Part shown: piece by piece, positions 1-19,536 of the stretch
How positions within the stretch are numbered: the stretch's first letter is position 1
Layout of the letters: each line of letters begins with the position of its first letter
NCBI GenBank assembly: GCA_002269645.1
Contig: NIVC01005231.1
Location: forward strand, 1-19,635
Source of the DNA: Macrostomum lignano
Lineage: Eukaryota
Direction: 5' to 3'
Length of the DNA: 19,635 nucleotides
Notes under the pieces: model-generated
What the model was told of the DNA's origin: nothing
The model's database searches: none
Seen by the model: only the letters and a program-made list of their open reading frames with translations
Made by a program: the position numbers and the translations under genes

Positions 1-295
1 ATCAATGTCACTCTATTGTATCAATGTCACTCTATCGACATCAATGTCACTCTATCGACAATGTCACTCTATCGTATCAATGTCACTCTATTGGTATCAA
101 TGTCACTCTATTGGTATCAATGTCACTCTATCGTATCAATGTCACTCTATCGGTATCAATGTCACTCTATCGATATCTCAATGTCACTCTATCGTATCAA
201 TGTCACTCTATCGGTATCAATGTCACTCTATCGGTATCAATGTCACTCTATTGGTATCAATGTCACTCTATCGGTATCAATGTCACTCTATAGTC
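1..295. repeat. Tandem minisatellite, 19-20 bp unit (GGTATCAATGTCACTCTATC), truncated by the window start
   Basis: CAATGTCACTCTAT recurs every 19-20 bp, about 15 times. The repetitive ORFs 5..586, 16..801 and 24..293 begin as translations of this repeat. Confidence 0.97.
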
Positions 296-334
296 AGCAA
301 TGTCAATCAACCCTCCCAATTCCTCCAAACCCAG

Positions 335-1297: not shown

Positions 1298-2065
1298 CTC
1301 AGCGGCAATCTCACTCAGCTGCTGTCGGCCTGTCGCCACGCCTGCCCAGCGCAGCCGACCTGGCCACCGTTGGCGCCTTCGGCCACCTCATCGCCCTGCT
1401 GATCGGCTGCTGCACCGCCGTGGTGCTGTTCACCGAGACCGGCCTGTGCGACAGCGGCCTGGAGCAGCGCCTGGCCAAGCCGGCTGGCCGTCACCTCAGC
1501 CTGGCTCTCATCGCGTCGCTGGCGCCGCCGCTGCACGGCCTGCTGGGCTGGCCGCTGCTGACAGGGGCCACCATCCGATCGCACACGCACGTCCGGGTGC
1601 TGACGCTGGCGGATCCGGCTAACCCGATTCCCGGCTGTCCGAGGCGCGTCCTTGGCGTGGCCGAGCAGCGGGTCAGCGGCCTGGCCGTGGGGCCCTGCTG
1701 GTGGCCTCGGTGCTGGCGGCCCGGCTGCTGCGCCTCATCCCGCTGGCCGCCATGGACGGCATGTTCCTCTGCATGGGCCTGGCCGCCCTGGCCGACCTGC
1801 AGCTGGCCGACCGGCTGTTCAACCTGCTGAAACTGAAGAAGAATCGCCAGCCGAAGCCCTACTTGGACGTGCCGAGCGCTGTGCTGCTGGCGTTCACGGC
1901 TCTGCAGCTGGCCCACGTGCTGCTGCTGCTCACGCTGAACTGCCTGGCCCAGTTTCTGCAGCTGGCCTACGCAGCCCTCGCCTTCCACTGGTCATTCTGG
2001 CCTTCGCCTTGCAGCGCCACCTGCTGCTACCGCGCTGGCGGCTCATCTCTAAACACCTGGCCAAG
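1298..2065 (+). CDS. SLC4-family exon, C-terminal half of the membrane domain, with 3 apparent -1 frameshifts (~1320, ~1691, ~1975)
   Basis: GHLIALLIGCCTAVVLFTETGL, GWPLLTGATIRSHTHVRVL (cf. ATTVRSVTHANAL), VLGVAEQRVSG (cf. VxEQRxSG), LLRLIPLAAMDGMFLCMGLAALADLQLADRL (cf. LxxIPLAVLFGIFLYMGVxSLxGIQLFDR), LAFTALQL and LPLVILAFALQRHLLLP. Acceptor cccgcag| ends at 1297; donor aag|gtaatt starts at 2066. Both are phase 0. Confidence 0.88.
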
Positions 2066-2985: not shown

Positions 2986-3190
2986 CTAAAATCGGTTTCT
3001 CTCCACGATGATGTTAACTTGTTTTAGGACGTGCTGTCTGATGTAATCCATGACGATCCCAGAGCTCTTGAATTGTTGACCCGTCAGAGGCAAATTCTTA
3101 TACATCGAGAAGGTCGCAGATGTAAATGCGTTTAACATGCAAGCCCTTCGAGCTGCCGTTTTCTTCTGTGTAACGTGTACGCTGTCTGCG
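2986..3190 (-). mobile_element. Ty3/Gypsy-like gag fragment
   Basis: RRACMLNAF...YKNL...IVMDYIRQHVLKQVNIIVERNRF resembles the N-terminal gag pattern of K02A2.6-like elements (A.LL...Y..L....L..H....N..xER..F). Recognised by eye only. Confidence 0.5.
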
Positions 3191-3269
3191 TCATCGCGTC
3201 GGATTTTGACTGGCATTGCGGCAGAAGGAGAGTAGGCCAAATACGACAGGTAGGGCTCTGGAGCGCGCG

Positions 3270-4127
3270 AGCAGCGACTGAGAGTGGGCACCAGAAGCGA
3301 GCCAATGGAGAGCGCAACGGGGAGCGGCGAGCTTCTCATTGAAGGAGCTGGTGAGAGCGCGCCCGGGGCAGAGATGTGCCACACCACTTGGGGGGGGGGG
3401 TCACCCGTGCAGATGACCACAGAGAAACCGCCGTTGGTGGTGCCCTCAGTGGCGGAGCCGTCGCAATAGATGCTGACGATGGCGGGGCGGGAGGAGGCAG
3501 AGCGGGTGTCAAGTGGTTCGCGCAACTATCGCTCCGGTGGCAAAGTGGCGAGCAGGTTGGAAGCGTGCCGCCTCTGGCCGAGCGGTGGTTGACCTGACCA
3601 GTCGCCATGTCGCTTGTGGTACAGAAAGAGCAAAGCAAAAACTGGCCTCGATGCGCAGCGCTTCAATCGGCGTTGAGCGATGATTCGGGAGCGGCGTTTT
3701 GCGAACGTTGGAGCTTCTCAAAAGTGGTGCCGTCTAGCCAAGGGTGACAGGCGGGGTCGGCGTACAGCATGATACTCCGTTGCATGGCGATAAAAGTGCG
3801 CTTGAGGGCGTCTTTCTGCCATTCCCAATCGCGCGCGGCGAGGCAGACCAGCATGCGATTGCGCGAATGCACCTTCCTGCAAACTCCTTCCGTGTGCGTG
3901 CTGAAGGTGAGGATCCGATCGTAAGTAAGGCCGAGCAGCCGCGGCGTGAGATTGCGCTTGAGTGGGGCTTGGCCGAGGCTAAGACGCGGGGACCATTTTG
4001 CCTTCACCGGGTAGATGGAGAAAAAGGCAGCCTCGCTCTTGGTAGGATTAAGGGCGAGCTTGCGGGAGGCGCACCACTCGGTCACGGCGTCGAGGCCAGC
4101 CTGGACCTCGGCTTCTGCGATCCGCTT
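3270..4127 (-). mobile_element. Degenerate, 5'-truncated non-LTR retrotransposon fragment (I/Ingi-like): RT C-terminus/thumb plus RNase H
   Basis: VQAGLDAVTEWCASRKLALNPTKSEAAFFS, PRLLGLTYDRILTF, LKRTFIAMQRSIMLYADPACHPWL...KLQRSQNAA, STPIEALRIEA, then RNase H IYCDGSATEGTTNGG. Several frameshifts and internal deletions. Confidence 0.85.
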
Positions 4128-5655
4128 CGCAGCCATATGGCGTGATTTCTTTTTGGTACACTCGAACTAAAACACTAACTCTAAGGGTCAGGAGGCACAC
4201 AAAATCCGCTCACTAAGAAGTGGGGCGACTACAAGATAAAACTAGAAGAGTGGGGAAATAAATGTACAGTGGAATGGACGGAGGGGCTAGCGTATGTACT
4301 TTGAGATAGAGCTAAACTATTCAAAGTCTATTGTACCCTTTGTAAGGGTTGCACAAATCAGAGTACATGTAATTCTCGTTGAGAGTACCTCATCACGGAA
4401 ATCTTTGTTAAAACGAGGTGCCGTAAAAACTTAGCGTAGATCAGTTCCGAAAAACTCCGCCGCACACTTAAACACTTGAAATTGGTGTTGCGTGCGTCCT
4501 ATGGGCTTGCGATCACGCTCTAGAGGGAATTGACAAGCAATGTTTTTGCTTCATTAGTACAATTTCTTGGAAGGGGTTTCACAAATCAGGGAACACTCTT
4601 TGAATTTGAATGTTCCTCTTCACGGAAATCGTTGTTAAAACGAGGTGCCGTAAAAACGGGTACATATCTGTTCGGAAGAACTCTGCCGCTGTATTATTGT
4701 TTTATTTAATCGAAAGAATTTAAATATTTACAGGTGATAAAAATAAGGAAATCTAAAAAATGCGTGCTGGATTTTTAAGAGCCTGTTAAAGGCAAAAAGA
4801 GGCTATTGAGTAAAAAATGAAATCAAACGCCAGAGCGCATGTTCAGATAAAATTTTATAGGTAGTATATCATTGGTATAAAAACAGCCAGGGGTATTTGT
4901 AAAAGCTGTCAAAGAATACAAATAGTTTGAATAAAGTAAATTTTCACAGGGAGATTACAGATCATACAAGGGTCCTATCATCCGATCTCTCTGGCTCAGG
5001 CAGCATAAATAGTCTTTTTAATGCATTTCAGCGCGTGCTCACTTCGGGTCTGGGAGACTGTCGACCAGCCTAACCTTGGATTAGGAATCCCCTGTTTCTT
5101 TCCCGAAGCCTTATGGCATCCTACAGAGCAGAGGGTCGCCTCTGAGATCTCGAAAGGCACGTCAGGTGTGACAAATGTGATGACTGGCTGCTGCTGGACT
5201 CTGTCGGGCCCTGTATGGGTTATCCAGCGGTCGGGCTCTGGATGGATGTTCAAGCAGCTTTTCCTCACGCAGCGCGCCGCCCAGGAAGACATTGTAGTCT
5301 TGCCCCGACGCCGGCAATACGAGGTAGGCCGGCTGATTCGCCATCTGCGCAGTGTTGACGCCGCGGCTTCACCAGCAAAAAATTTGCCTGTACGAGCAGC
5401 CAGACAATATAGGGCACCAGCTTGTTGGCCGCGACCTGTTACACTTTGAAAACCACCGGCGGGATGGCAGCCTGAGGCCTGCATTCGATTTAGATATTGA
5501 AAGAATATTGAAATAAAAGTTTAAATAAATAAAACTATTTTTCAATATTTGGAATTTCTTTGCATACATTTGGAGTTTGAAAAAGTAGACAAATACTGCA
5601 CACAGAAGGGGTCTGATAAAAATGAGGAAATCTAAACAAATACGTGCTGGATACA
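4128..5655 (-). mobile_element. Mosaic of diverged fragments of the AlkB-LINE family (5'UTR+ATG 4128-4406; mini unit 4407-4630; 3'UTR 4631-5150; ORF1 middle 5160-5484; 3'UTR piece 5485-5655)
   Basis: Clear block similarity: 4128-4406 to 6876-7170, 4631-5150 to 7171-7830, 5160-5484 to 11570-11880 (MANQPAYLVLPASGQDYNVFLGGALREEKLLEHP), and 5485-5655 to 7280-7450. Confidence 0.85.
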
Positions 5656-5663
5656 ATTGTATG

Positions 5664-6884
5664 AGTCTCGCGTCGCCTGCTGCCCCCGAGGCCTGTCATC
5701 GTCCTTGCCGCCTTGGTCGTCGCCGAAGGGACCACCGTTAAGCGGCTGGCTGTAGGTCGGGTCATCCGGCAGAGCCCGCTTGCGCCACAGCTCCGGCTTG
5801 GTGACGCGGAAGGTTAGCGAGATGCAAACACCATTCTGAGAGTGGGCGGCGGGCGCCTGGTGCTGCAGGCGCTTCTGGCAGTTTCCTGCCATCAGAATCA
5901 GCGAGCCTGGCAGCGTTGGAAAGCGGTGCGTCACGTTGCCGTCCCGACGGCGCAGCATAAACAGCCGCTCAGCGCCGAAGGACACGTTTGCGATCGTCGG
6001 CCCGTCGCCGAGCTCGTCCTCATCATCCGAGTGCCAGGGAATCCGGTCTCCCGGCTCGGTGTAGAAGTTCACCAACACGGAGTTGAACTTCGGGACATCG
6101 AACTGGGTATCATGGTAAATGAAGTCACGAATGTCTTCAATTACCTGATGCCAGTCTAGATTTTCCTTCAGCTCAACCCCGCTGTAGGTGTACGACGGGC
6201 CGATCCAGTAGACGCGGCGCTGCTCACTCGGACGATGCTGAAAGGCCAGAGGCAGCAGGTCGGTGATCAGGCGCTCGTAGACTTGGTCCGCGACCTCGCT
6301 CAGGAACTTGGGCGCATAGATGATGGTGCTGTCGCTGGCGTAGATCGTCTGCTGACAGTCAGTCAAGTCAGGCTCATCAGGGAAGATGATTTGACTGATG
6401 TCAGCGTCCAGTTGCTCGGCAGCGGCTTTGGCAGCGTCGAGGCCTGGTCTGCAACCGATTGCTGGCGCTCCTCAGACGTCGGCGCTGCCGCTGCCGCACT
6501 GAGCTCGCTGGACTCGGCAGTTGGTGGCTCGGTGGTTGCTGCGGCCTCGTTGGATGGCAGGGCGCTTGTCTGGCTTGGCTCGTCGCAGTCGAGAGACATG
6601 CGCTGCTCTGCCTCTGCGCCTGCAGCCTCCGGCAGCTGCTCATTCTCTCGCAGGATCTCCTCTGCGTTGCGCAAGAGCTCGCCGGCCGGTGGGCTGATCG
6701 AGTGGCGGCCTTCCAGACTGCGTCGAGCTCGCATCTGGCCTGCTGGCGGCGGGCTCGCGGTCGATGGCTCAGCTGTCGGCGTCAGTCCAAGAAGCTGGCG
6801 ACCGTAGGCTTCGTTCGGACGATACCGGTGCTCAAGAGAGGGCCGGCAGTCCATCTTTTTAGCGCTGGCGCGATTTGCAGCCAT
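5664..6884 (-). pseudogene. Truncated ORF1 copy with a complete AlkB-like domain (~5800-6330); 1-bp frameshift at ~6423; first 2OG-binding Arg changed to Cys
   Basis: ORFs 6363..6884 and 5632..6366 are the two frames of the same protein as 13347-12080. The motif reads WHSDDE...LQHQ...CISLTFR, versus RISLTFR in the full-length copy. Confidence 0.85.
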
Positions 6885-7170
6885 ATGGCGTGATTATTTG
6901 GGTGCACTCACACTAAACTAAACTAGACAACTACTAATGAGTCAGGAGGCACACAAAGTGCGCTCGCTGAGAGGGGTGGGGCGACTGCAAGATAAGACTA
7001 GGGGTGGGGTAGAGATAAAAACAAATGTACAGTGGAATGGAAGGCTAACTAAAGTACTTTAAGAGCTAAGCTAGGCTAGTCTAAACTATTCAACTTCTAA
7101 TAAGCCTTTCTAGGAAAGGCCTGCAAAAACTAGAGAATTCTCCTAAGAGTATCCCTCCACGGAAATCTTT
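5664..7170 (-). mobile_element. Second, 3'-truncated tandem copy of the AlkB-LINE (5'UTR plus N-terminal half of ORF1)
   Basis: Colinear with 12080-13634. About 98-99% identical over most of 6030-7170 and more diverged below 6030. Confidence 0.93.
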
Positions 7171-7225
7171 GTTGTTGTTAAAACGAGGTGCCGTCGAAAC
7201 CGGCGCGGGTCAGTTCCGAAGAACT
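7171..7225 (-). other. LINE 3' terminus: AGUUC-UUCG-GAACU stem-loop (7225-7212) followed by an (AAC)3 tail (7179-7171)
   Basis: Perfect 5-bp stem closing a cUUCGg loop, ~32 nt before the tail. Variants occur at ~4443-4456 and ~4669-4682. Confidence 0.65.
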
Positions 7226-7812
7226 CTGCCGCAGTTATATTTTGTATTTGATCGAAAGAATTAAAAATATTTACAAGATTTCGATTTGAATATTTAATAC
7301 GAATATTGAAATTAAAAATATACATATATAAAACTATTTTTCAATATTTTGCAGAATTTTGCACGCATTTGGGGATAAAAAAGAGGGGAGGGAATCCCAC
7401 ACAAAGAAGGGATCTAATAAAAACAGGACATCTAAAAAATACGTGCTAGATATTTGAAGGCCTATTGAGAATAAAAGCAAGACATTTAAGTAAAAAATAG
7501 AGATTAAAAATGCAATAGCGCATATTTGAATTTAGTTGTAAAAATAGAATGAATATAGTAAAGGTGTAAAAAAGCAATTAGTGATATTTGTAGAGCAGTT
7601 GGGTAAAAAACACAGTTGGGAAAATTGTAAAAAGAAACGCGAGGAGACATAGAGATTACCTAATCAGTCCTAATGACTGATCAACCGATCTCTGTCTCAG
7701 GCAGCAAGTTTAGTTTTATTAGTTGCGTTTCAGAGCGTGGTCACTTCCGGTTTGGAAGGCTGGTAGCCAGCCTAACCCTGGGGTGGGATTCCCCTGTTTC
7801 TTTCCCGACGCC

Positions 7813-10547
7813 TCATGGCATCCCAGAGGACATTGAGGACGGGGTTCGGCCCGGAGCCCGAGGGGCTTCCGGCTCAATGTGGAAGCTGTGGAGCTTGGCT
7901 GCCCTCATCTTGAGCAGCCAAGCCACCCCCAGCTGCTTGACTCTGTCTGCGAGCATCGGCATACCTGCCAGCTTGTGCAGGTATTCAATGCTGATGTAGG
8001 ATGGCACACCATAGCAGATACGGAGAGCCAGGTTTTGAATTTTTGCAATTTGATTTGGTTAGTCGCACAAATTTGGCTCAGGATTGGCGCTCCATAGGTG
8101 AGAGCGCTTTCTCCGTATGCCCTGTACAGCATTCTGAGGGTGGTGCTACTCAGCTTAGTCATTTTTGCAATTCTGCACAGTGACATTACAATGGCTCTGC
8201 TGGTATCTGCCATGTTGTCCACATGTTTGTTCAGGCAGAGGCTCTGGTCAAGGAGGACACCCAGGAATTTCACCTCCTGACAGTACGGAACCTCAGTGTC
8301 CCCCAGATACAGTTTGGGTCGCAAGTCCATGCGCCTAGTGGGTTTGTAGTTGAAAGCGATTGCTTTGCTTTTCCCGGCATTCAGTCTAATGCCCTGTTTA
8401 CCGCACCAGTCAAAGACTCGTCTGAGGTAGCTTTGAAGGGATGTTCGGAGCCCCGCAAAGGTGTCTGCTGAGGCCCAGACGGCCATGTCGTCTGCGAATT
8501 GACTGCGTTTGACGCTTGAGATGGTGGGAGTCGGCATTGAGCTGACGAAGAGGAGGTACAGGAGAGGGCTCAGAATGCCTCCCTGAGGGACGCCAGCCTG
8601 GATGGTGTGGGGATCGCTTAGGGCCCCCTCGATTCGAACCTGGATCTGTCTGTCTCGCAGGTAGTCAGACAGGATTCGCATGAGCATAGGTGGAAAACCA
8701 TCAGTGAGCATGCTATGCCTGATCTTGTCGTGCCAGGTGGAGTCAAAAGCTGCCTCTGCATCCAGGAAGACTGCAGCGGACTTTTTAGCTTTGCACTTTG
8801 CTACCATGACATCTTGTGCCAGACGGCACAGGTTGTCATACGTGGAGTGAATTTTGCGGTAGGCGCATTGGTCATCTCCTAGGGTCTTATTATCCTCAAG
8901 GTGCTTGGTGAGTCTTTTTGCTATAAGCTTCTCAAACACTTTGCCCAGACATGAGGTCAGGCTGATTGGTCTGTAGGAGTTGGGGTGTTCGGGCGGTTTG
9001 TCCGGCTTGGGGATCATTGTCACCACAGCTTTCTTCCAGGCGCTGGGGAAAATCCCTCGACCGTAGCAGGCGTTGAAGAGGTTAGTGAGTCTCGTGATTG
9101 CCACCCCCTCTAAGCCCAGCTTGAGGACGCAGTTGGGAATCTTGTCCAGCCCGGGTGCTCCATCAGGCCTGAGGTGCTCCAGTTCCCACACTGTGTCTGC
9201 CACAGAGAATGCAGCATCAAGTGGGTGGGTCTCGAATGGGTTCGATTCCCTCAGGAACGGGGTAGAATGAGGTGAGCTGTGCCACATCGGCCACCTCACG
9301 TTTGAGCTGTTCGCATGTGGAAGGGACTGGGCGCATCTTTGAGTCCAGAGTCTCGGCTAGAAGGTTAGCCTTCTCCAGATCTGTGTGCGCAGTTGTTTGA
9401 CCCAGGGTGAGGCTGGGGATGGAGGTTGGCTTAAATTTGCCCAGCAGCTTTTTAGTGTCGTGCCAGAAATTCTTCACTTTCTTGTTCTTGCTATTTTCAA
9501 CAATACTCTCACAGACTTTGGTGAGCTTTCCATTCTGGAAGGCGCTAATTTCTCTCTTTATGCGATTTGCGAGCTGGTTTGCTTGGGTTTTGAAATTTTG
9601 ATCCCGTGTGCTGAAGAAGAGGCGTCTGAGTCGTCTGCGCTCTTTGATCAGGTCGAGGATGTACTTGGGTAGGGCGTTTTTGGCACCACAGTCTGGTACT
9701 GTGGAGTCAATCACGGTGTGAATGGCCTTTGTGATGTGATCCACTTCGGCATTGATTTGGTCAGCATTTGATAATTTAATATTCTGATCTGAGCTCAAAG
9801 CTTCACTGATTTTGAGTCTGAACTCGTCCCAGTTTGTTTTTGAGAAGTTTTTGGGTCTGGGGGGACCAGCCCATTTCTTCGACTGAATATTGAGCGTGAG
9901 GATTATAGGTAAGTGGTCACTGCCCAGGTCAGGACCCACCTCAAAGTCCTGCACAAATGGGAGAAAGTCCTCAGTGGCCAGGGCGAGGTCCAAGACATTC
10001 CTAGAAATCAGCCCGTTTTTGGTGGCCAGTCTGGTGAACTGACCGGCCTGATTGAGAATGGTGGGCGAGTGGGGCCCTCAGACAGCCAGTCGTGCAGCTG
10101 GTAGCCAGCCATGTTGTTGCTGCTGTCACCCCCGAGGAAGCGGTGTCTGGCATTGAGGTCACCCATGAGCACACTGCGCCTACGGAGAGAAGATTTTTGA
10201 GTAGGTTCAGGTTCAGATGGTACGGTGCTGGAGACCTGTACACCAGAGCGAGATTGAAGTCAGGACCAGAGTTGTCAGACAAGCTCACGGTGCAAGAGAT
10301 GGCTTCATGGTTGACATTGTCATACTGCAAGCGCACATTTGTGAGTTTGACGCGAGGAGAGTGGCAAGGAGAAGCCCGCGTTTGACTTGCGGGGTATCAT
10401 ACCGAATGATGGAGTACCCGGGAATCTGGACAGTGTGACAACTTTTGAGAATGGTCTCAGAAAGAGGGCAATGTCTAGCTCCTGACTGACGACCCACTGT
10501 GTCAGCTCTCTGATTTTCGGGTTGAATCCCCTGCAGTTTAAATGCAT
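7813..10547 (-). CDS. LINE ORF2: APE endonuclease (~10547-9890) plus reverse transcriptase (~9170-8270) and thumb; 6 frame breaks; no RNase H seen
   Basis: APE motifs: HLNCRG, LFSET, GYSIIRYD, VYRSP, MGDLNARH, LDLAL, GSDHLPI. RT motifs: APGLDKIPN, SYRPISLTSCLGKVFEKLI, FLDAEAAFD, GVPQGGILSPLLY, QFADD, FLGVLLD. Breaks near 10460, 10350, 10180, 10065, 9250 and 8040. Confidence 0.93.
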
Positions 10548-10640
10548 AATCTTCAGGGCTGTGGTTTGATTGTTTGAGTCTACAGTTAACGCACTGAAGT
10601 TTCAATTCAAGTCTTGAGTTTAGCTGCCTGAGACTAGGAC

Positions 10641-13347
10641 TCAGTGGTCATGCCCGGCACTTCCTGCCATGCCCGGCACTTCCTGGAGTGCAGCCCGCAC
10701 AATGTCCTCAACCATTTTACTGGTTGATTCCACAGTGAGGACCTCCCCAGGCGGTCGGGACAGGGCCTGCACAACCACTTGAGTCAGAGAGCGGGTGATC
10801 AGGGGCAACAGCATGCTCACCACCGACATAAAGTCACTAAGCTGCAGCTGCACCGCCTGGCCGGCATCAGCTGACGGAGCAGTCGCATTGACATCAGACT
10901 CGGTCTCTGCCGCCGGAGCGCTCCTGGCATCATCGGTCACGATGACAAGCGGCCGGATCGCGGCGGGTACCGGCACCGTGCGCCTGCCTCGGCGGATCAG
11001 CCAGCCGCTGTCGGAGTCGTCGTCGGCGGCGGCGTCGTCGGTCTCACTTGACACTGGGGCAGCAGCGGCCGCAGCTTCCGCAGCTCGCGCCGCGGCTTTG
11101 GCCTCAGCAGCCGCTCTGGTCGCCTTGTCGTGCTCCGCCTTGGCGACGGTGCAGGCTCGACTGGTGGTTCGGTGCGAGCCGCCGCAGTTGGCGCAGACCG
11201 CTGGGCCCTCGTGCTGGCACTCCTTCCAGGAATGCTGGCCGCCGCAAATCCGGCAGCGCTGCTGCCCCCGACACTGGGCAGCGCGGTGGCCGAACTCCTG
11301 GCAGCGCTGGCATTGCAGAGCGCGGACCGGCTCGTCTGTGCGGCTGTCCTCGCAGTTGAACTTCAAGAAGTCGGTGCAGATGCCATCGCGGAGGCACTTC
11401 TCGTAGGTCATCGCCGACTTTGTGAAGATGCGCACGAACTGGGTTGCCTTCCCAGTCGCTCTGGCTCGGATTCTGTGGACGCTGACAATGTCCAGCTTGA
11501 GCGTGCGCGCAACAGGGTCGCGAAGTCAGCCTCCGAGAATGCGAGGGGCACCTCAGTAGCGACGAAGGTGCGTACCGGCTGCTGCTGCACTCTGTCGGGC
11601 CCTGTTCTGTTGTCCAGCGGTCGGGCTCGGGCTGGACGGCGCTTTACGGGATGCTCGAGCAGCTTCTCCTCGCGCAGCGCGCCGCCCAGGAAGACGTTGT
11701 AGTCCCGCTCCGACGCTGGGAACACGAGATAGGCCGGCTGATTCGCCATCGGCGCAGTGTTGACGGCTCTAGCTTCGCCGGCAAAGTTGGTCTGCAGCCA
11801 GGCAACGAACTGCATCAGCTTGTTGGCCGCGTCCCGGTGCACCTCAAAAACGATCGGCGGGATGGCAGCCTGGGGCCTTCTGGGCGGCGCAGGGCGCGCC
11901 GCAACCTGCGCGTAGGGCCGCGCTGCCGCAGCCGCCTGCGCGCTTGTCGCCGAAGCCGCCGCCGCACCGGCCGGCCAGGAAGCCGCCGAAGCCGCCGCCG
12001 CACCGGACGCCGCGCCGCGACCTCCTCGCCTGCCTCGCTGGTGGCCGCCACGGCCGCGCCGACCCCGATCGCCTTCGCGGTCTCGCGTCGCCGTCGCCTG
12101 CCGCTCCTGGGGCCTGTCGTCGCCCCGGCCGCCCTGGTCGTCGTCGTGGCCGCCTTGGTCGTCGTCCCGACCGCCTTGGTCGTCGCCGAATGGGCCGCCG
12201 TTTAGCGGCTGGCTGTAGGTCGGGTCATCCGGCAGAGCTCGCTTGCGCCGCAGCTCCGGCTTGGTGACACGGAATGTTAGCGAGATGCGGACGCCATTCT
12301 GAGAGTGGGCGGCGGGCACCTGGTGCTGCAGGCGTTTCTGGCAGTTTCCTGCCATCAGAATCAGCGAGCCTGGCAGCGTTGGAAAGCGGTGCGTCACGTT
12401 GCCGTCCCGACGGCGCAGCATGAACAGCCGCTCAGCGCCGAAGGACACGGTCGCGATCGTCGGCCTGTCGCCGAGCTCATCCTCATCGTCCGAGTGCCAG
12501 GGAATCCGGTCTCCCGGCTCGGTGTAGAAGTTCACCAACACGGAGTTGAACTTCGGGACATCGAACTGGGTATCATGGTAAATGAAGTCACGAATGTCTT
12601 CAATTACCTGATGCCAGTTAGATTTTCCTTCAGCTCAACCCCGCTGTAGGTGTACGACGGGCCGATCCAGTAGACGCGGCGCTGCTCACTCGGACGATGC
12701 TGAAAGGCTTGAGGCAGCAGGTCGGTGATCAGGCGCTCGTAGACTTGGTCCGCGACCTCGCTCAGGAACTTGGGCGCATAGATGATGGTGCTGTCGCTAG
12801 CGTAGATCGTCTGCTGACAGTCAGTCAAGTCAGGCTCATCAGGGAAGATGATTTGACTGATGTCAGCGTCCAGTTGCTCGGCAGGGGGCTTTGGCAGCGT
12901 CGAGGCCTGGTCTGCAGCCGATTGCTGGCGCTCCTCAGACGTCGGCGCTGCCGCTGCCGCACTGAGCTCGCTGGACTCGGCAGTTGGTGGCTCGGTGGTT
13001 GCTGCGGCCTCGTTGGATGGCAGGGCGCTTGTCTGGCCTGGCTCGTCGCAGTCGAGAGACATGCGCTGCTCTGCCTCTGCGCCTGCAGCCTCCGGCAGCT
13101 GCTCATTCTCTCGCAGGATCTCCTCTGCGTTGCGCAAGAGCTCGCCGGCCGGTGGGCTGATCGAGTGGCGGCCTTCCAGACTGCGTCGAGCTCGCATCAG
13201 GCCTGCTGGCGGCGGGCTCGCAGTCGATGGCTCAGCTGTCGGCGTCAGTCCAAGAAGCTGGCGACCGTAGGCTTCGTTCGGACGATACCGGTGCTCGAGA
13301 GAGGGCCGGCAGTCCATCTTTTTAGCGCTGGCGCGATTTGCAGCCAT
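10641..13347 (-). CDS. LINE ORF1 (~902 aa after restoring 1 nt each at ~12618 and ~11500): low-complexity N-terminus, AlkB domain, DDQGG/RGG/Ala linker, gag-like region, 3 CCHC knuckles
   Basis: Joined from ORFs 12604..13347, 11408..12541 and 10641..11435. The base missing at 12618 is present in the second copy (GAAAATCTAGACTGG). The span of 2707 nt plus 2 gives 903 codons. Confidence 0.87.
11151..11312 (-). other. Three CCHC zinc knuckles of ORF1
   Basis: CQRCQEFGHRAAQC, CRICGGQHSWKEC and CANCGGSHRTTSRAC (CX2CX4HX4C, CX2CX3HX4C, CX2CX3HX6C), the spacing typical of Jockey/I-group ORF1. Confidence 0.95.
12262..12790 (-). other. AlkB-family 2OG-Fe(II) dioxygenase domain (ALKBH2/ALKBH3-like) inside ORF1
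   Basis: YTYSG, FNSVLVNFY, WHSDDEDELG (HxD at 12496-12488), IATVSFGAERLF, GSLILMAG, LQHQVP (His at 12325-12323) and RISLTFR (12289-12269). Confidence 0.93.
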
Positions 13348-13824
13348 ATGGCGTGATTATTTGGGTACACTCAAACTAAACCTAAACTACAACTAACTAA
13401 TGAGTCAGGAGGCACACAAAGTGCGCTCGCTGAGAGGGGTGGGGCGACTGCAAGATAAGACTAGGGGTGGGGTAGAGATAAAAACAAATGTACAGTGGAA
13501 TGGAAGGCTAACTAAAGTACTTTCAAGAGCTAAGCTAGGCTAGTCTAAACTATTCAACTTCCAATAAGCCTTTCTAGGAAAGGCCTGCAAAAACTAGAGA
13601 ATTCTCCTAAGAGTATCCCTCCACGGAAATCTTTAGTAAAAGGCGAAAGATTTAATCGTGGAATGAAGAGAAACCAGAGTTGAAGTTAAACAAGTCTGGG
13701 TAGCTTTTTTTGTAGAAAATTCTGTAACCGCTTTAATTAAACATTCGTTTTCATAAAGCATTCGTTCCTGGAATGCCAATCTCTCTACTGACATAAGTGG
13801 AACTATTTGCGCATGAAAGTTAGT

Positions 13825-14764
13825 TTTTGTCTACGCAGTTTTTTTCTATGCTGTAGAGAGTGGGAGGATAGGCAGTAAAATTTCGGTAATTTTTTTAAAA
13901 CTTCATAGTAAGTCTTTTCTGAAGTAGCCACTGGTTAGCGAGGGTGATGACCTCTTCTTTGGACTCGAAGCGGTGCCACGGAGTGGCCACTTGAGCTGAC
14001 GGAATAGATGAAAATCGGAGGGTGCCAGGTCTGGTGAATAGGCCGGATGTGGGAGGATTTCGAACCCCGCAGTGGTGGCAGCATTCACCGCAACCTGGGC
14101 AGTGTGAGCTGAGGCATTGTCGTGAAGCAGCAAGGGGGCCAGCACTCAGCTTCCCCCGCTTCTTCTGGACCACTGCCTGACGAAACCGGCCCAGCTGTTC
14201 GGAGGACCAGACACCTGTGACAGTGTGCCTAACAGACAGGTACTCGGCGAGCAGGATCCCCTGAAAGTCCAGAAGAAACAGCCCTGGAATCTCGCTTAGA
14301 CACGGGGGTCCATAGTGGCAGATCCAGCACTCATCCCCAGTAATGATTCATCGCTCAAATCCATCCAGGTTCTCATTGTAGAGGTCAGGCAGTAGTCCCG
14401 ACGAGAAAGCATTCGGGGCGCTACTGCCTCAACTTTTATGGCTCACCCTGCCACGCTTGAATTCGTTGTAAAGTCGCTCGATGGTGCGCAGAGAGGGACA
14501 AGTTGTGGGGTACAGACTTTATCTTCTCCTCAATTGCAAAATTTAATATGAGGGCTCGGTATTTCTGCTTGTGTGTGCATTTTGCGGAAAATTCAGGGGG
14601 TGCTTAAAGTTCGTGCAGAAAAGATACAGTTAAAAAGACATGAAAAGAAAACACTGCACCCTATAAATTCTATATAAAAGTACTTTAAAAAGCCGAAAAA
14701 AATATTAAAAAAAAGCTTTTGAAATGGCTGAACGGCAAAACTATAGATTTGAACCACCCTCGTA
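13825..14764 (-). mobile_element. Degenerate mariner (DD34D) DNA transposon with one TIR
   Basis: RTIERLYNEFKRGR (HTH), IITGDECWICHYDP, LLLHDNASAH and HPAYSPDLAPSDFHLF. The 5' end on the - strand reads TA-CGAGGGTGGTTCAAA (14764-14748), a mariner-like TIR with a TA target dinucleotide. Stops, frameshifts and deletions are present. Confidence 0.88.
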
Positions 14765-15284: not shown

Positions 15285-16001
15285 AGAGAGACAGAATTGC
15301 AGAGAGACAGAATTGCAGAGAGACAGAATTGCAGAGAGACAGAATTGCAGAGAGACAGAATTGCAGACAGACAGAATTGCAGAGACAGAATTGCAGAGAG
15401 ACAGAATCGCAGACAGACAGAATTGCAGACAGATAGAATTGCAGAAATACAGAGTTGCAGACAGACAGAATTGCAGGCAGACAGAATCGCAGACAGATAG
15501 AATTGCAGAAATACAGAGTTGCAGACGGACAGAATCGCAGACAGACAGACTTGCAGACAGATAGAATTGCAGAAATACAGAGTTGCAGACAGACAGAATT
15601 GCAGACAGACAGAATTGCAGACATACAGAATTGCAGACAGACAGAATTGCAGACAGACAGAATTGCAGGCAGACAGAATCGCAGGCAGACAGAATTGCAG
15701 GCAGACAGAATCGCAGGCAGACAGAATTGCAGACAGACAGAATCGCAGGCAGACAGAATTGCAGACAGACAGAATTGCAGACAGACAGAATTGCAGACAG
15801 ACAGAATCTCAGGCAGACAGAATTGCAGACATACAGAATTGCAGACAGAAAAAATTGCAGACAGACAGAATTGCAGACATACAGAATTGCAGACAGACAG
15901 AATCGCAGGCAAACAGAATCGCAGACAGAAGCAGACAGGCGGCACAGAAGCAGACAGGCGGCACAGAAGCAGACAGGCGGCACAGAAGCAGACAGGCGGC
16001 A
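15285..16001. repeat. 16-bp minisatellite (AGACAGACAGAATTGC variants), ending in four 19-bp units (CAGAAGCAGACAGGCGGCA, 15926-16001)
   Basis: Period read directly from the sequence. It accounts for all the repetitive ORFs at 15255-16326. Confidence 0.97.
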
Positions 16002-16519: not shown

Positions 16520-16920
16520 CAGCATCTGACACGGATGACACTTACAGCATCTGACACAGATGGACACTTACAGCATCTGACACAGATGGACACTTACAGC
16601 ATCTGACACAGATGGACACTTACAGCATCTGACAAAGATAGACACTTACAGCATCTGACAAAGATAGACACTTACAGCATCTGACACAGATGGACACTTA
16701 CAGCATCTGACACAGATAGACACTTACATCATCTGACACAGATGGACACTTACAGCATCTGACACAGATATGACACTTACAGCATCTGACACTGATAGAC
16801 ACTTACAGCATCGGACACAGATGGACACTTACAGCATCTGACAAAGATGGACGCTTACAGCATGACAAAGATGACACTTACAGCATCTGACACAGATAGA
16901 CACTTACAGCATCTGACACA
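16520..16920. repeat. 26-bp minisatellite (GACACTTACAGCATCTGACACAGATG), ~15 copies
   Basis: CTTACAGC recurs at 16541, 16567 and onward with period 26, with a few shortened units. Confidence 0.97.
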
Positions 16921-17194
16921 AATGGTTTTCGTAGCGCTTTGATACAGTTTGACATGAATTGGGAATATTTGAGCATCGGATATGTACCGTTTTAAAAAGC
17001 GCTTTGTTTCATTTCATTTGTTTAATGCTATTAAGTACCGATATAGCCATCAAATTTTCCTTTTTGGCTTGTATTATTTTGTGCCAACTTTTCAAAAAGG
17101 ATGAAGTCTGAATCTTACTACTGTCAGTAGGTAAAAAGTTATATATAAACATATACTCGTAAATAAACAAATTAACTACTCGTATATACCACAG

Positions 17195-18327: not shown

Positions 18328-19536
18328 AACTCCAGCTCCCCAACTCCAGCTCCCCAACTCCAGCTCCCCAACTCCAGCTCCCCAACTCCAGTTGCCCAAC
18401 TCCAGTTCCCCAACTCCAGCTCCCCAACTCCAATTCCCCAACTCCAGCTCCCCAACTCCAGTTCCCCAACTCCAGCTCCCCAACTCCAATTCCCCAACTC
18501 CAGTTCCCCAACTCCAGTTCCCCAACTCCAACTCCCCAACTCCAGCTCCCCAACTCCAGCTCCCCAACTCCAACTCCCCAACTCCAGCTCCCCAACTCCA
18601 ATTCCCCAACTCCAGCTCCCCAACTCCAATTCCCCAACTCCAGCTCCCCAACTCCAATTCCCCAACTCCGATTCCCCAACTCCAGCTAACCAACTCCAGT
18701 TCCCCAACTCCAGCTCCCCAACTCCAGCTCCCCAACTCCAACTCCCCAACTCCAGCTAACCAACTCCGATTCCCCAACTCCAGCTAACCAACTCCAATTC
18801 CCCAACTCCAGTTCCCCAACTCCAGCTCCCCAACTCCAGTTCCCCAACTCCAGCTCCCCAACTCCAGTTGCCCAACTCCAGTTCCCAACTCCAGCTCCCC
18901 AACTCCAATTCCCCAACTCCAGCTCCCCAACTCCAGTTCCCCAACTCCAGCTCCCCAACTCCAATTCCCCAACTCCAGTTCCCCAACTCCAGTTCCCCAA
19001 CTCCAACTCCCCAACTCCAGCTCCCCAACTCCAGCTCCCAACTCCAACTCCCCAACTCCAGCTCCCCAACTCCAATTCCCCAACTCCAGCTCCCAACTCC
19101 AATTCCCCAACTCCAGCTCCCCAACTCCAATTCCCCAACTCCGATTCCCCAACTCCAGCTAACCAACTCCAGTTCCCCAACTCCAGCTCCCCAACTCCAG
19201 CTCCCCAACTCCAACTCCCCAACTCCAGCTAACCAACTCCGATTCCCCAACTCCAGCTAACCAACTCCAACTCCCCAACTCCAGCTCCCAACTCCAATTC
19301 CCCAACTCCGATTCCCCAACTCCAGCTAACCAACTCCAATTCCCCAACTCCGATTCCCCAACTCCAGCTCCCCAACTCCAATTCCCCAACTCCGATTCCC
19401 CAACTCCAGCTAACCAACTCCAATTCCCCAACTCCGATTCCCCAACTCCAGCTAACCAACTCCAATTCCCAACTCCAATCCCCAACTCAAATTCCCAACT
19501 CCAATTCCCCAACTCCAACTCCCCAACTCCAACTCC
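18328..19536. repeat. 14-bp strand-asymmetric satellite (CCCCAACTCCAGCT; - strand AGCTGGAGTTGGGG), ~85 units
   Basis: TCCAGC recurs at 18331, 18345 and 18359. The variable 4-mer is agct, agtt, aatt, aact or gatt. It accounts for the W/G/E-rich ORFs at 18220-19569. Confidence 0.97.

What the first reader, a model, noticed from the sequence alone, without database searches (positions are those of the whole stretch)
7150..7200. Recurring head-to-tail junction: (AAC)n tail abuts the family's own 5' end three times
Seen on the - strand: CCTCGTTTT-(AAC)3-AAAGATTTCCGTG (7187-7158), -(AAC)2-GATTTCCGTG (4645-4621) and -(AAC)1-AAAGATTTCCGTG (4418-4394), in copies that are otherwise clearly diverged. 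The outermost unit begins at the same AAAGATTTCCGTG (13634). Established: Drosophila HeT-A/TART form head-to-tail arrays and TART has long internal repeats. Inference: this family either targets the 5' end of its own copies or is transcribed as terminally redundant or read-through RNA. That could be an unusual array-building mode.
Basis: partly seen in the sequence, partly recalled or inferred. Interest (0 to 1): 0.75.

Follow-up and report, generated by a model that had tools for sequence, protein, structure and literature searches.

The report
LINE arrays built inside U5 snRNA genes
The repeated "tail meets its own head" junction is a retrotransposon's 3' end joined to the second half of a U5 spliceosomal RNA gene, so this flatworm (Macrostomum lignano) element appears to insert again and again at one spot in U5 genes and stack into arrays, as R1 elements do in ribosomal genes.

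Summary
Three exact junctions, GGCACCTCGTTTT-(AAC)1-3-(AAA)GATTTCCGTG, lie on the minus strand; none is expected by chance. The interpretation needs one correction. The "family's own 5' end" is U5 snRNA. Rfam finds an intact U5 gene at 13682-13567(-), and AAAGATTTCCGTGG... is U5 from the 3' edge of loop I to its 3' hairpin.

The element is a 6.45-kb APE/RT LINE. Its ORF1 carries an ALKBH3-like AlkB domain. Every 3' tail, in the window and in four regions of three other M. lignano contigs, abuts U5 position ~47. Each array is headed by an intact U5 or a U5 5' part.

Two U5 genes with unrelated upstream DNA carry elements that differ by 0.4%. One contig holds a 5'-truncated copy flanked by a 14-bp duplication of the U5 site.

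The best reading is a U5-gene-specific LINE. It re-inserts at the U5 site kept at the head of resident copies, and recombination then reshapes the arrays. This matches R1 tandem arrays in 28S rDNA and the U2-targeting Keno and Utopia elements.

It is not telomeric. It is not one inherited duplication. It is not a new array-building mode. Interest is moderate: a new member of a known kind, with an unusual AlkB ORF1.

The parts
13683..13762 (-). Promoter-like block just upstream of the U5 gene (includes TGCTTTATGAAAACGAATGTTT).
   Evidence: It is 69% identical to the -80..-1 region of a second U5 gene (L003). DNA further upstream is unrelated, at 48%. Reading it as a PSE-type snRNA promoter element is inference.
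13567..13682 (-). Intact U5 spliceosomal snRNA gene that heads the array.
   Evidence: Rfam RF00020: 83.7 bits against a gathering score of 40, E 2e-13, model positions 1-117. It folds into the long stem-loop I with loop CGCCUUUUACU plus a 3' hairpin.
13567..13634 (-). U5 positions ~47-117: 3' side of stem I, Sm site AGUUUUUG and 3' hairpin.
   Evidence: The same 68 nt recur after every A-type tail.
7180..13566 (-). Element A, full length. 5'UTR 13566-13348. ORF1 13347-~10641, with an N-terminal region, AlkB, an RG-rich stretch, an RRM-like part and 3 CCHC knuckles. ORF2 ~10556-~7776, with APE endonuclease and RT. 3'UTR down to 7180, with a UUCG-capped hairpin near 7215-7240.
   Evidence: Pfam finds 2OG-FeII_Oxy_2, zf-CCHC and RVT_1. 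The intact 926-aa ORF2 of the sister copy in L003 has Exo_endo_phos plus RVT_1. Fold. The frames are interrupted in this copy.
7171..7179 (-). (AAC)3 tail of element A.
7103..7170 (-). Second copy of U5 positions ~47-117. This is junction J1, the reported finding.
   Evidence: 98-100% identical to 13634-13567.
5695..7102 (-). Element B: only the first ~1.4 kb of an A-type copy (5'UTR, ORF1 N-terminal region and AlkB).
   Evidence: 97% identical to 13566-12158. AlkB domain E 1.1e-19. It differs from the other A-type units by 1.6-2.6% substitutions.
4637..5694 (-). Mosaic of older-type element fragments: 3'UTR-like, ORF1-like, and ORF2-end with 3'UTR. It ends in the canonical 3' end.
   Evidence: 73-80% identical to pieces of element A. 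Sequence.
4631..4636 (-). (AAC)2 tail, junction J2.
4557..4630 (-). Diverged U5-like 3' part (C type). It starts at GATTTCCGTG without the AAA, with Sm-like GAUUUGUG and a degenerate hairpin.
   Evidence: Alignment A1. The L005 counterpart keeps a perfect hairpin, CCCCTTC/GAAGGGG.
4410..4556 (-). Body and 3' end of mini-unit C. The whole unit is 212 bp: a U5-like head, a short body and the LINE 3' end.
4407..4409 (-). (AAC)1 tail, junction J3.
4333..4406 (-). Diverged U5-like 3' part (D type), with Sm-like GAUUUGUG and hairpin ACCCTT/AAGGGT.
4123..4332 (-). D-type 5'UTR and the ORF1 start codon (ATG at 4136-4134). Similarity to the family ends here.
   Evidence: 70-71% identical to 13566-13334 and 7102-6871.

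Best explanation
The window (Macrostomum lignano) holds a 6.45-kb APE-endonuclease/RT LINE that integrates sequence-specifically into U5 snRNA genes. The integration point is the 3' edge of the conserved loop I, between ...CGCCUUUUACU and AAAGAUUUCCGUGG.... Shown here: every 3' end of the family, ...GGCACCTCGTTTT(AAC)n, is joined to U5 position ~47. Each array starts with an intact U5 gene or a U5 5' part. Each unit is preceded by U5 positions ~47-117. Inferred mechanism: the endonuclease nicks the bottom strand at this site, and target-primed reverse transcription starts on the (AAC)n/AAAG end of the RNA. The top strand is cut about 14 bp downstream, which gives a 14-bp target duplication AAAGATTTCCGTGG in 5'-truncated copies. 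Full-length RNAs probably carry U5 sequence at their 5' end because they are co-transcribed from the U5 promoter. The cDNA then anneals to the target's U5 5' part, and second-strand synthesis restores an intact U5 in front of the new copy. Because the U5 target site is regenerated at the head, and is also carried between units next to a tail that resembles the natural upstream context (CnTTTTA), later copies can land there again. That gives head-to-tail arrays with the youngest units towards the 5' end. Unequal exchange and gene conversion then change copy number and make the units mosaic. The 'head-to-tail junction' is therefore an element/target junction.
For: Full-length U5 heads the arrays in L003 and L005, and a U5 5' part heads the one in L004. 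All 12 distinct tail junctions, in the window and in four regions of three other contigs, are followed by U5 position ~47. The tails vary: (AAC)1-3, extra A's, an extra T, or a missing AAA. This is the small variation expected of separate priming events. The window's U5 gene and that of L003 have unrelated upstream DNA (48% at -200..-81, 69% at -80..-1). Yet the U5 genes are 98% identical, the element 5'UTRs 100%, and the whole units differ by 0.36%. Between the paralogous loci W, L004 and L005 the flanks differ by 2.4-3.4%, but the units by only 0.45-0.8%. L004 has U5 1-60, then an 8-nt filler, then the last ~577 bp of the element, a unique tail (AACAAC+AAAAAAG), and then U5 47-117. That is a 5'-truncated insertion with a 14-bp target duplication. 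The element encodes an APE endonuclease and RT, and one copy keeps an open 926-aa ORF2. Neighbouring units are not always each other's closest relatives. Precedent comes from R1 tandem arrays separated by the 14-bp 28S target duplication, formed by insertion into the duplication at the 5' end of resident copies (PMC2718515). Utopia and Keno sit in U2 genes, and Utopia is sometimes tandem (PMC4640811). One Tx1 family is listed with target 'U5 snRNA' (PMC4494074).
Against: Only arrays reachable through annotated AlkB proteins could be fetched. All of them lie near the same 16-bp and 26-bp satellites, so they may trace back to a small set of related loci. A genome-wide census of 3' ends and of U5 genes was not possible. 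No empty U5 site and no single insertion outside an array was seen. The L004 'target duplication' could also be produced by a deletion that starts inside the U5 part of a full-length unit. The head units of three loci share a 5' haplotype while their 3' parts group by array. This shows strong recombination or conversion, which could by itself spread arrays between U5 paralogs. Downstream flanks differ between loci, and one array ends in an assembly gap, so misassembly of this PacBio-era genome cannot be excluded for copy numbers. No copy has both ORFs open in the assembly. Two related LINEs from other organisms (L002, L010) show no U5 in their contigs. Transcription from the U5 promoter is inference only.
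Confidence: 0.78

Rival explanations
1. One old event followed by DNA-level amplification only. A single LINE landed in or next to a U5 gene once. One tandem junction arose, and all present junctions descend from it by unequal crossing-over, segmental or whole-genome duplication, and gene conversion between U5 paralogs. There is no site-specific retrotransposition.
For: All fetched arrays lie near the same satellites. Copy number differs between paralogous loci: 1.2, 2 and at least 5 units. Informative sites are mosaic, and the head units share a haplotype. R1 arrays in D. melanogaster did expand this way (10.1101/158386).
Against: Divergence drops sharply at the U5 boundary, from 31-52% upstream to 0-2% in the U5 gene and element, between the window and L003. 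Units are 3-6 times less diverged than flanks among W, L004 and L005. Tails differ at individual junctions, and one junction has a unique tail with a 5'-truncated copy, a filler and a 14-bp duplication. Diverged subfamilies (A, C, D and L005 mini-units) all have the junction at the same U5 nucleotide but carry different U5-like heads with compensatory hairpin changes. The family encodes an endonuclease and RT, with 1.2% or less divergence between units.
Confidence: 0.12
2. U5-LINE chimeric retrocopies. The reverse transcriptase switches template from the 5' end of the LINE RNA onto U5 snRNA, as in mammalian U6/L1 chimeras. It stops in the heavily modified loop I, so each new copy acquires a U5 47-117 head wherever it inserts. 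On this reading the arrays are secondary.
For: Each unit starts with the 3' part of U5 and not the whole U5. snRNA/LINE chimeras are documented in mammals (PMC4476161, listed).
Against: The heads of the arrays are complete U5 genes with a conserved promoter-like upstream block at two different loci. All 3' ends, not just 5' ends, abut U5 at the same nucleotide. The truncated copy in L004 lacks a U5 head of its own, yet it sits inside U5 with a target duplication.
Confidence: 0.05
3. HeT-A/TART-like end-healing arrays at or near a telomere, or a terminally redundant RNA that targets the family's own 5' end.
For: Head-to-tail orientation, with younger units at the 5' side. The nearest named RT relatives are annotated as jockey/BS-like, and jockey is the clade of HeT-A/TART (from memory).
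Against: The junction nucleotide is fixed, with no variable 5' erosion. There are no telomeric repeats. Non-repetitive DNA lies on both sides, including a host gene fragment. The junction sequence is U5, not element sequence.
Confidence: 0.02
4. Assembly artefact. The tandem structure or its copy number comes from collapse, expansion or chimeric joining of long repeats in the assembly.
For: L004's array runs into a run of N. Downstream flanks disagree between loci. Many indel differences between units look like long-read errors.
Against: The same junction occurs at 12 distinct places in four independent sequences with small, junction-specific differences. It also occurs between old, diverged mini-units that are too short to confuse an assembler.
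Confidence: 0.03

Closest known systems
R1 elements of arthropod 28S rDNA, including their tandem arrays (Stage & Eickbush 2009, PMC2718515; McGurk & Barbash, 10.1101/158386)
   Same: An APE-type LINE with a rigidly fixed 3' junction in a multicopy RNA gene. It makes a 14-bp target duplication. Head-to-tail arrays have units separated by target sequence, are formed by re-insertion into the target copy at the 5' end of a resident element, and are later expanded by unequal exchange. Some R1 lineages carry upstream target sequence on their transcripts and use it for precise 5' joining.
   Different: The target here is a Pol II snRNA gene (U5 loop I), not 28S. The spacer between units is ~68-71 nt of U5, not 14 or 33 nt. 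An intact target gene is restored at the head. ORF1 carries an AlkB domain. ORF2 has no C-terminal Cys motif that I could see. Clade membership was not tested.
Keno (Tx1 clade) and Utopia (restriction-like endonuclease) LINEs that target U2 snRNA genes (Kojima & Jurka 2015, PMC4640811)
   Same: Specific insertion at one conserved site of a spliceosomal snRNA gene. The 3' junction is precise and the 5' junction variable. Disrupted snRNA gene fragments lie next to element 3' ends. Utopia-1_NVit is occasionally tandem in U2 genes.
   Different: A different snRNA (U5) and site. Utopia has a different endonuclease type. Here every full-length unit keeps the 3' part of the snRNA as a leader.
Tx1-clade family listed with target 'U5 snRNA' in Kojima 2015, Fig. 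3 legend (PMC4494074)
   Same: A LINE recorded as targeting U5 snRNA genes, so U5 as a LINE target is not unheard of.
   Different: Only a figure-legend mention could be read. The family name, host and site are not available here. The present element's named relatives are annotated as jockey/BS-like, and its ORF2 C-terminus lacks a CCHC motif. It is probably not Tx1, but no phylogeny was possible.
Drosophila HeT-A/TART/TAHRE telomeric arrays
   Same: Head-to-tail LINE arrays with the newest units at the 5' end of the array.
   Different: Those attach to chromosome ends with variable 5' truncation and oligo(A) tails. Here there is a fixed internal target nucleotide in a gene, (AAC)n tails, an endonuclease, and no telomere.
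SINEU (snRNA-headed SINEs; Kojima 2015) and R2-derived SIDEs (PMC3414825)
   Same: The mini-units here are 115-212 bp and consist of a U5-like head, a short body and the LINE 3' end. They resemble snRNA-headed or internally deleted non-autonomous partners that depend on the flanking gene's transcription.
   Different: They are seen only inside these arrays, and independent mobility is not shown.
AlkB domains in other retroelements and viruses (orchid Ty3/Gypsy AlkB, PMC9289625; plant Flexiviridae, from memory)
   Same: A 2OG-Fe(II) AlkB-type demethylase captured by a reverse-transcribing or RNA element.
   Different: Here it sits in the ORF1 of an animal LINE and is most similar to ALKBH3 among solved structures.

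Membership tests
Target-site-specific non-LTR retrotransposon (R1/Keno/Utopia-type behaviour) | Encodes its own endonuclease and reverse transcriptase. | tested here: met
   Exo_endo_phos/Exo_endo_phos_2 at residues 1-217 and RVT_1 at 513-765 in an open 926-aa ORF2. RVT_1 in the window copy.
Target-site-specific non-LTR retrotransposon (R1/Keno/Utopia-type behaviour) | The 3' junction falls at the same nucleotide of the same target sequence in separate copies. | tested here: met
   All 12 distinct junctions are followed by U5 position ~47, give or take 3 nt. The target is identified as U5 by Rfam.
Target-site-specific non-LTR retrotransposon (R1/Keno/Utopia-type behaviour) | Copies occupy independent copies of the target, with different flanks. 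| tested here: inconclusive
   Two U5 genes with unrelated proximal upstream DNA both carry it. However, all loci share more distant satellites, and only four sequences were available.
Target-site-specific non-LTR retrotransposon (R1/Keno/Utopia-type behaviour) | 5'-truncated copies lie in the target with a target-site duplication. | tested here: inconclusive
   One case is L004 9071-9708, with a 14-bp AAAGATTTCCGTGG duplication and an 8-nt filler. A deletion could mimic it.
Target-site-specific non-LTR retrotransposon (R1/Keno/Utopia-type behaviour) | Genome-wide restriction of insertions to the target. | not testable with these tools
   The M. lignano genome could be reached only through annotated AlkB proteins.
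R1 clade | RT phylogeny places the element within R1, and ORF2 has a C-terminal Cys-His motif. | not tested
   No reference set was available. The last 170 residues of ORF2 show no CCHC motif, which is a lead against membership, judged from memory of the clade's features.
Tx1 clade (includes Keno and the listed U5-targeting family) | RT phylogeny places the element within Tx1/L1. | not testable with these tools
   Named hits are annotated 'jockey'/'BS' at 33-36% identity. Among solved structures, L1 ORF2p and R2 score alike, E 7e-18 against 2e-16.
HeT-A/TART-type telomeric retrotransposon array | Units are joined tail to variably truncated 5' ends, at a chromosome end, without a fixed target sequence. 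| tested here: not met
   The junction nucleotide is fixed. There are no telomere repeats. The array is flanked by ordinary DNA.
U5 spliceosomal snRNA gene (the head of the array) | Matches the U5 covariance model over its full length, above the curated threshold. | tested here: met
   83.7 bits against 40, model 1-117. 83.8 and 83.5 bits in L003 and L005.
AlkB/ALKBH 2OG-Fe(II) dioxygenase (ORF1 domain) | Pfam PF13532 above threshold, with the HxD...H iron triad and RxxxxxR present. | tested here: met
   E 1e-19 and 2e-16. ALKBH3 (2iuw) E 1.3e-23, with WHSDDE, QHQVP and RISLTFR aligned. Activity was not tested.

The most novel reading that the evidence does not exclude
The element lives as a U5 passenger. 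It is transcribed from the U5 snRNA promoter as a U5-headed RNA that keeps the Sm site and 3' hairpin. It may therefore use snRNP biogenesis and import. At each insertion it rebuilds an intact U5 gene in front of itself, so the target is never destroyed and arrays grow from the head. On this reading the ALKBH3-like domain in ORF1 clears RT-blocking base methylation from this snRNA-like template. That would be a self-healing, promoter-borrowing LINE strategy not described for snRNA genes.
Probability: 0.2. Interest if true: 0.75.

Novelty: new member of a known kind. Interest (0 to 1): 0.5.

Why it matters
The finding turns an apparent new array-building mode into a recognisable one: site-specific re-insertion into a multicopy RNA gene. 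That is still useful in three ways. First, LINEs that target snRNA genes are few. [quoted passage not shown] A well-resolved U5 loop-I case in a laboratory flatworm adds a tractable example of how a LINE endonuclease reads a short conserved site. Second, the restored U5 head and the U5-derived leader bear on how site-specific LINEs obtain transcription and make precise 5' junctions. Third, the AlkB-bearing ORF1 shared with LINEs from other organisms points to RNA or ssDNA demethylation as a retrotransposon function in animals. For genome annotation, it warns that M. lignano 'Fe2OG dioxygenase' gene models (BOX15_Mlig027759, Mlig005735, Mlig027526) are LINE ORF1s. It also warns that U5 gene counts there are confounded by element-linked half-genes.

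Tried and rejected
1. Ribozyme at the unit's 5' end. I suspected an HDV-like or hammerhead ribozyme that would process a read-through transcript. Rfam at gathering and at E up to 10 found none, only U5 and a chance SmY-like match to the U5 half.

2. Penelope-like pseudo-LTR or terminal redundancy. The 97% repeat 7170-5695 / 13634-12158 is the start of a second unit. In sister loci the second unit is full length.

3. Telomeric repeats: none.

4. (AAC)n as a targeted microsatellite. This was rejected because the outermost 5' flank has no AAC repeat and the flank is U5.

5. Microhomology deletion as the origin of L004's truncated copy. Both GATTTCCG copies are retained, so it is not a simple microhomology deletion. 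A non-homologous deletion remains possible.

6. U5 next to related LINEs in other organisms (L002 with 67% RT identity; L010/L011 and L012 with AlkB proteins). No U5 sequence or tandem junction was found.

7. A search with the post-AlkB part of ORF1 in the word-indexed database found only self. The exhaustive HMMER search did find relatives.

8. Clade assignment of the RT was not achievable without reference sets.

9. The literature on AlkB in LINEs turned up only orchid Gypsy elements.

10. The supplement of PMC4494074 that would name the U5-targeting Tx1 family is not held.

11. Early BLAST tables for 'L004' and 'L001' mixed several loci because one file holds several records. I recomputed them per locus.
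Full report
OBSERVATION.
- J1: GGCACCTCGTTTT (7192-7180), (AAC)3 (7179-7171), AAAGATTTCCGTG (7170-7158).
- J2: the same 13-mer (4649-4637), (AAC)2 (4636-4631), GATTTCCGTG (4630-4621).
- J3: the same 13-mer (4422-4410), AAC (4409-4407), AAAGATTTCCGTG (4406-4394).
- The outermost AAAGATTTCCGTG is at 13634-13622.

The composite pattern occurs 3 times, against 0 in 200 shuffles. Self-comparison shows a 6,463-bp direct repeat: 5695-7170 matches 12158-13634 at 97%. It also shows weaker (71-80%) similarity that runs across the junctions.

WHAT THE UNITS ARE. The minus strand between 13566 and 7180 is a non-LTR retrotransposon.
- ORF1 starts at 13347. It contains a 2OG-Fe(II)/AlkB domain (PF13532, E 2e-16; E 1e-19 in the second copy), followed by CCHC knuckles.
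- ORF2 has an RVT_1 domain (E 4e-37).
- A sister copy keeps an open 926-aa ORF2 with an APE-type endonuclease (residues 1-217) and RT (513-765). It has no RNase H, and no Cys motif in the last 170 residues.
- Protein searches identify the organism as Macrostomum lignano. The ORF1 fragments are annotated there as 'Fe2OG dioxygenase domain-containing' hypothetical proteins.

THE KEY RESULT. Rfam finds one family above threshold in the window: a full-length U5 spliceosomal RNA at 13682-13567(-), with 83.7 bits against a gathering score of 40, E 2e-13, model positions 1-117. It is U5 from the 3' edge of the invariant loop I (CGCCUUUUACU|AAAGAUUUCCGUGG) through the Sm site (AGUUUUUG) to the 3' hairpin. 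That stretch is 68 nt, 13634-13567. So the outermost 'unit' does not start at 13634. An intact U5 gene runs straight through that point. Each internal junction is the LINE's 3' end joined to U5 position ~47.

RELATED LOCI. Through the annotated AlkB proteins I fetched four regions of three other contigs of assembly GCA_002269645.1.
- NIVC01002892.1 holds at least 5 tandem units with a ~6.45-kb period (L003, L006).
- NIVC01003829.1 (L005) holds U5, a unit with internal deletions, a full unit, and then mini-units.
- NIVC01002030.1 (L004) holds a U5 5' part, a truncated copy, a full unit, and the start of a next unit that runs into a run of N.

Rfam finds full-length U5 at the head of the arrays in L003 and L005, and U5 positions 14-63 at the head in L004.

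All 12 distinct tails are followed by U5 position ~47. The tails differ slightly from junction to junction: (AAC)1, 2 or 3, AACAAC+AAAAAAG, TTTTTAAC, or loss of the AAA.

In L005 the A-type tail is followed by a diverged U5-like head. After 115 bp there is a still more diverged junction, ACCTCATTTTAAC-AAT-AATTTCCATGG.

The diverged heads (window C and D, L005 C') keep GATTTCCGTG and an Sm-like GAUUUGUG. Their terminal hairpin stems differ from the A type by paired changes: GCCTTTC/GAAAGGC, CCCCTTC/GAAGGGG and ACCCTT/AAGGGT. The U5-derived part has therefore evolved under structural constraint and has not simply decayed.

ONE INHERITED DUPLICATION, OR REPEATED INSERTION? Several results favour insertion.

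(i) The window's U5 gene and that of L003 are different genes. Upstream identity is 69% at -80..-1, with one well-conserved block that I read as a promoter element. It is 48% (unrelated) at -200..-81. The U5 genes are 98% identical, the element 5'UTRs 100%, and the whole units differ by 0.36% in substitutions.

(ii) Among loci that do share flanks (W, L004, L005), the flanks differ by 2.4-3.4% but the units by 0.45-0.8%.

(iii) L004 reads U5 1-60 (...AAAGATTTCCGTGG), then TGATTTCC, then the last ~577 bp of the element, a unique tail, and then U5 47-117 and a full unit. This is what a 5'-truncated target-primed insertion into the head U5 would leave, with a 14-bp target duplication and a short filler. 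R1 makes the same duplication length. A deletion starting within the U5 part could mimic this, so I count it as supportive and not decisive.

(iv) Neighbouring units are not always each other's nearest relatives.

Recombination is clearly also at work. Copy number differs between paralogous loci. The 39 informative sites are mosaic. The head units of W, L003 and L005 share a 5' haplotype (for example TTATTGGAAG just after U5, against TTATTAGAAG in internal units), while their 3' parts group by array.

MECHANISM (inferred). The endonuclease nicks the bottom strand of the U5 gene at position 46/47. Reverse transcription is primed on an RNA that ends in (AAC)n, or in read-through AAAG. The top strand is cut about 14 nt downstream.

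Full-length RNAs probably begin with U5 sequence because the element sits directly behind a U5 promoter and lacks an obvious promoter of its own. The cDNA end can then anneal to the target's U5 5' part, and second-strand synthesis rebuilds an intact U5 ahead of the new copy. This gives exactly the observed layout: U5(1-117), element, tail, U5(47-117), element, and so on. The target site is never lost.

The tail next to each internal U5 part (TCGTTTTAAC|AAAG) also resembles the natural site (GCCTTTTACT|AAAG). Internal junctions may therefore be hit as well.

The same logic is documented for R1. Its tandem arrays are separated by the 14-bp 28S duplication and are formed by insertion into the duplication at the 5' end of resident elements. 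Some R1 lineages carry upstream 28S tags that give precise 5' joins (PMC2718515). Later expansion is by unequal exchange (10.1101/158386).

COMPARISON WITH KNOWN FAMILIES. snRNA-gene-specific LINEs are known for U2: Keno and Utopia. Utopia-1_NVit is occasionally tandem in U2 genes (PMC4640811). A Tx1 family with target 'U5 snRNA' appears in a figure legend (PMC4494074), but I could not learn its name or site.

The present element's named relatives are annotated as jockey/BS-like, at 33-36% identity. I could not run a clade phylogeny.

The telomere analogy is not met. The junction nucleotide is fixed, there are no telomeric repeats, and ordinary DNA lies on both sides. Upstream are a weak mariner-type transposase match and satellites. 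Downstream is an HCO3-transporter exon fragment.

OTHER ANATOMY OF THE WINDOW.
- Element B (7102-5695) is only the first 1.4 kb of an A-type copy. It differs from the others by 1.6-2.6% and is joined to a mosaic of older-type fragments (5694-4637).
- Unit C is a 212-bp mini-unit: a U5-like head, a short body and the LINE 3' end.
- Unit D keeps only the U5-like head, the 5'UTR and the ATG (4406-4123). It then gives way to an unrelated 5'-truncated LINE with an RT C-terminal part and an RNase H-like DGS motif (4115-2986; 27% amino-acid identity to the closest RT relative).

SIDE FINDING. The ORF1 AlkB domain has the HxD...H and RxxxxxR motifs. Among solved structures it is most similar to human ALKBH3 (E 1.3e-23). 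An exhaustive HMMER search found unnamed 757-962-aa proteins from other sequencing projects. They share the AlkB domain and also the downstream RRM-like and CCHC part of ORF1 (30-34% identity over ~250 aa). One sits in a complete LINE with an EN/RT ORF2 (L010). An AlkB-bearing LINE lineage therefore exists beyond this species. That relative shows no U5 or tandem junction in its contig.

VERDICT. The head, however, is host U5 sequence. The thing is a U5-gene-specific LINE that builds R1-style arrays, and I rate it a new member of a known kind.

Two limits apply. Only a few related loci could be examined, so genome-wide specificity and the co-transcription step remain to be shown. Copy numbers depend on an old long-read assembly.

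Noticed in passing
window 12270-12800(-) and 5800-6366(-); L003, L004, L005: ORF1 of this LINE carries an ALKBH3-like AlkB (2OG-Fe(II)) domain with intact catalytic motifs. Unnamed 757-962-aa proteins from other organisms share both the AlkB domain and the RRM-like/CCHC part. One of them (L010) lies in a complete LINE. I found no paper describing AlkB in a LINE ORF1, only in orchid Gypsy elements.
   Followed up: partly
window 1-305, 863-1136, 15285-16001, 16520-16925, 18328-19536: Five tandem-repeat blocks surround the array: a 20-bp unit x15, GA-rich low complexity, a 16-bp unit x40 plus a 19-bp unit x4, a 26-bp unit x16, and a 14-bp unit x87 (AACTCCAGCTCCCC, with strong C skew). The 16-bp and 26-bp satellites recur upstream of the arrays in the other contigs.
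   Followed up: partly
window 13930-14290(-): A remnant that resembles a mariner/Tc1-type transposase (...PDLAPSDFHLF...) lies ~250 bp upstream of the U5 gene. The Pfam Transposase_1 match is weak (E 0.009, below the family's cut-off). It is absent from the L003 U5 locus.
   Followed up: partly
window 1420-1827(+): An ORF fragment matches the HCO3- transporter membrane domain (PF00955, E 5e-10). It is probably an exon of a host anion-exchanger gene downstream of the array.
   Followed up: no
window 2986-4115(-): An unrelated 5'-truncated LINE fragment (RT C-terminal part and an RNase H-like DGS motif) replaces the body of unit D straight after its start codon. No 3' end of it was identified.
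   Followed up: partly
unit positions 70-600 after each U5 head (window 13560-13030; L003 2600-3130; L005 1240-1770): The head units of three arrays share a 5' haplotype that internal units lack, while their 3' halves resemble their own array. This is a mosaic that needs recombination or conversion, or a recent wave of head insertions.
   Followed up: partly
window 7215-7240(-), also 4680-4660 and 4455-4435: A conserved 3'UTR hairpin, AGUUC-UUCG-GAACU, lies ~40 nt before the tail. It is kept in the A, older and C-type ends, and it is a candidate RT-binding signal.
   Followed up: no
L005 12240-13300: Downstream of the array in NIVC01003829.1 lies a different repeated family (~500-bp units with tctaatcttc motifs). 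It is unrelated to the window's downstream DNA, so the arrays have different 3' neighbourhoods.
   Followed up: no
L004 16548 onward: The array in NIVC01002030.1 ends in a run of N, so its true length is unknown. Many single-base indels between units look like long-read assembly errors, so the frameshifts in the ORFs may not be real.
   Followed up: no
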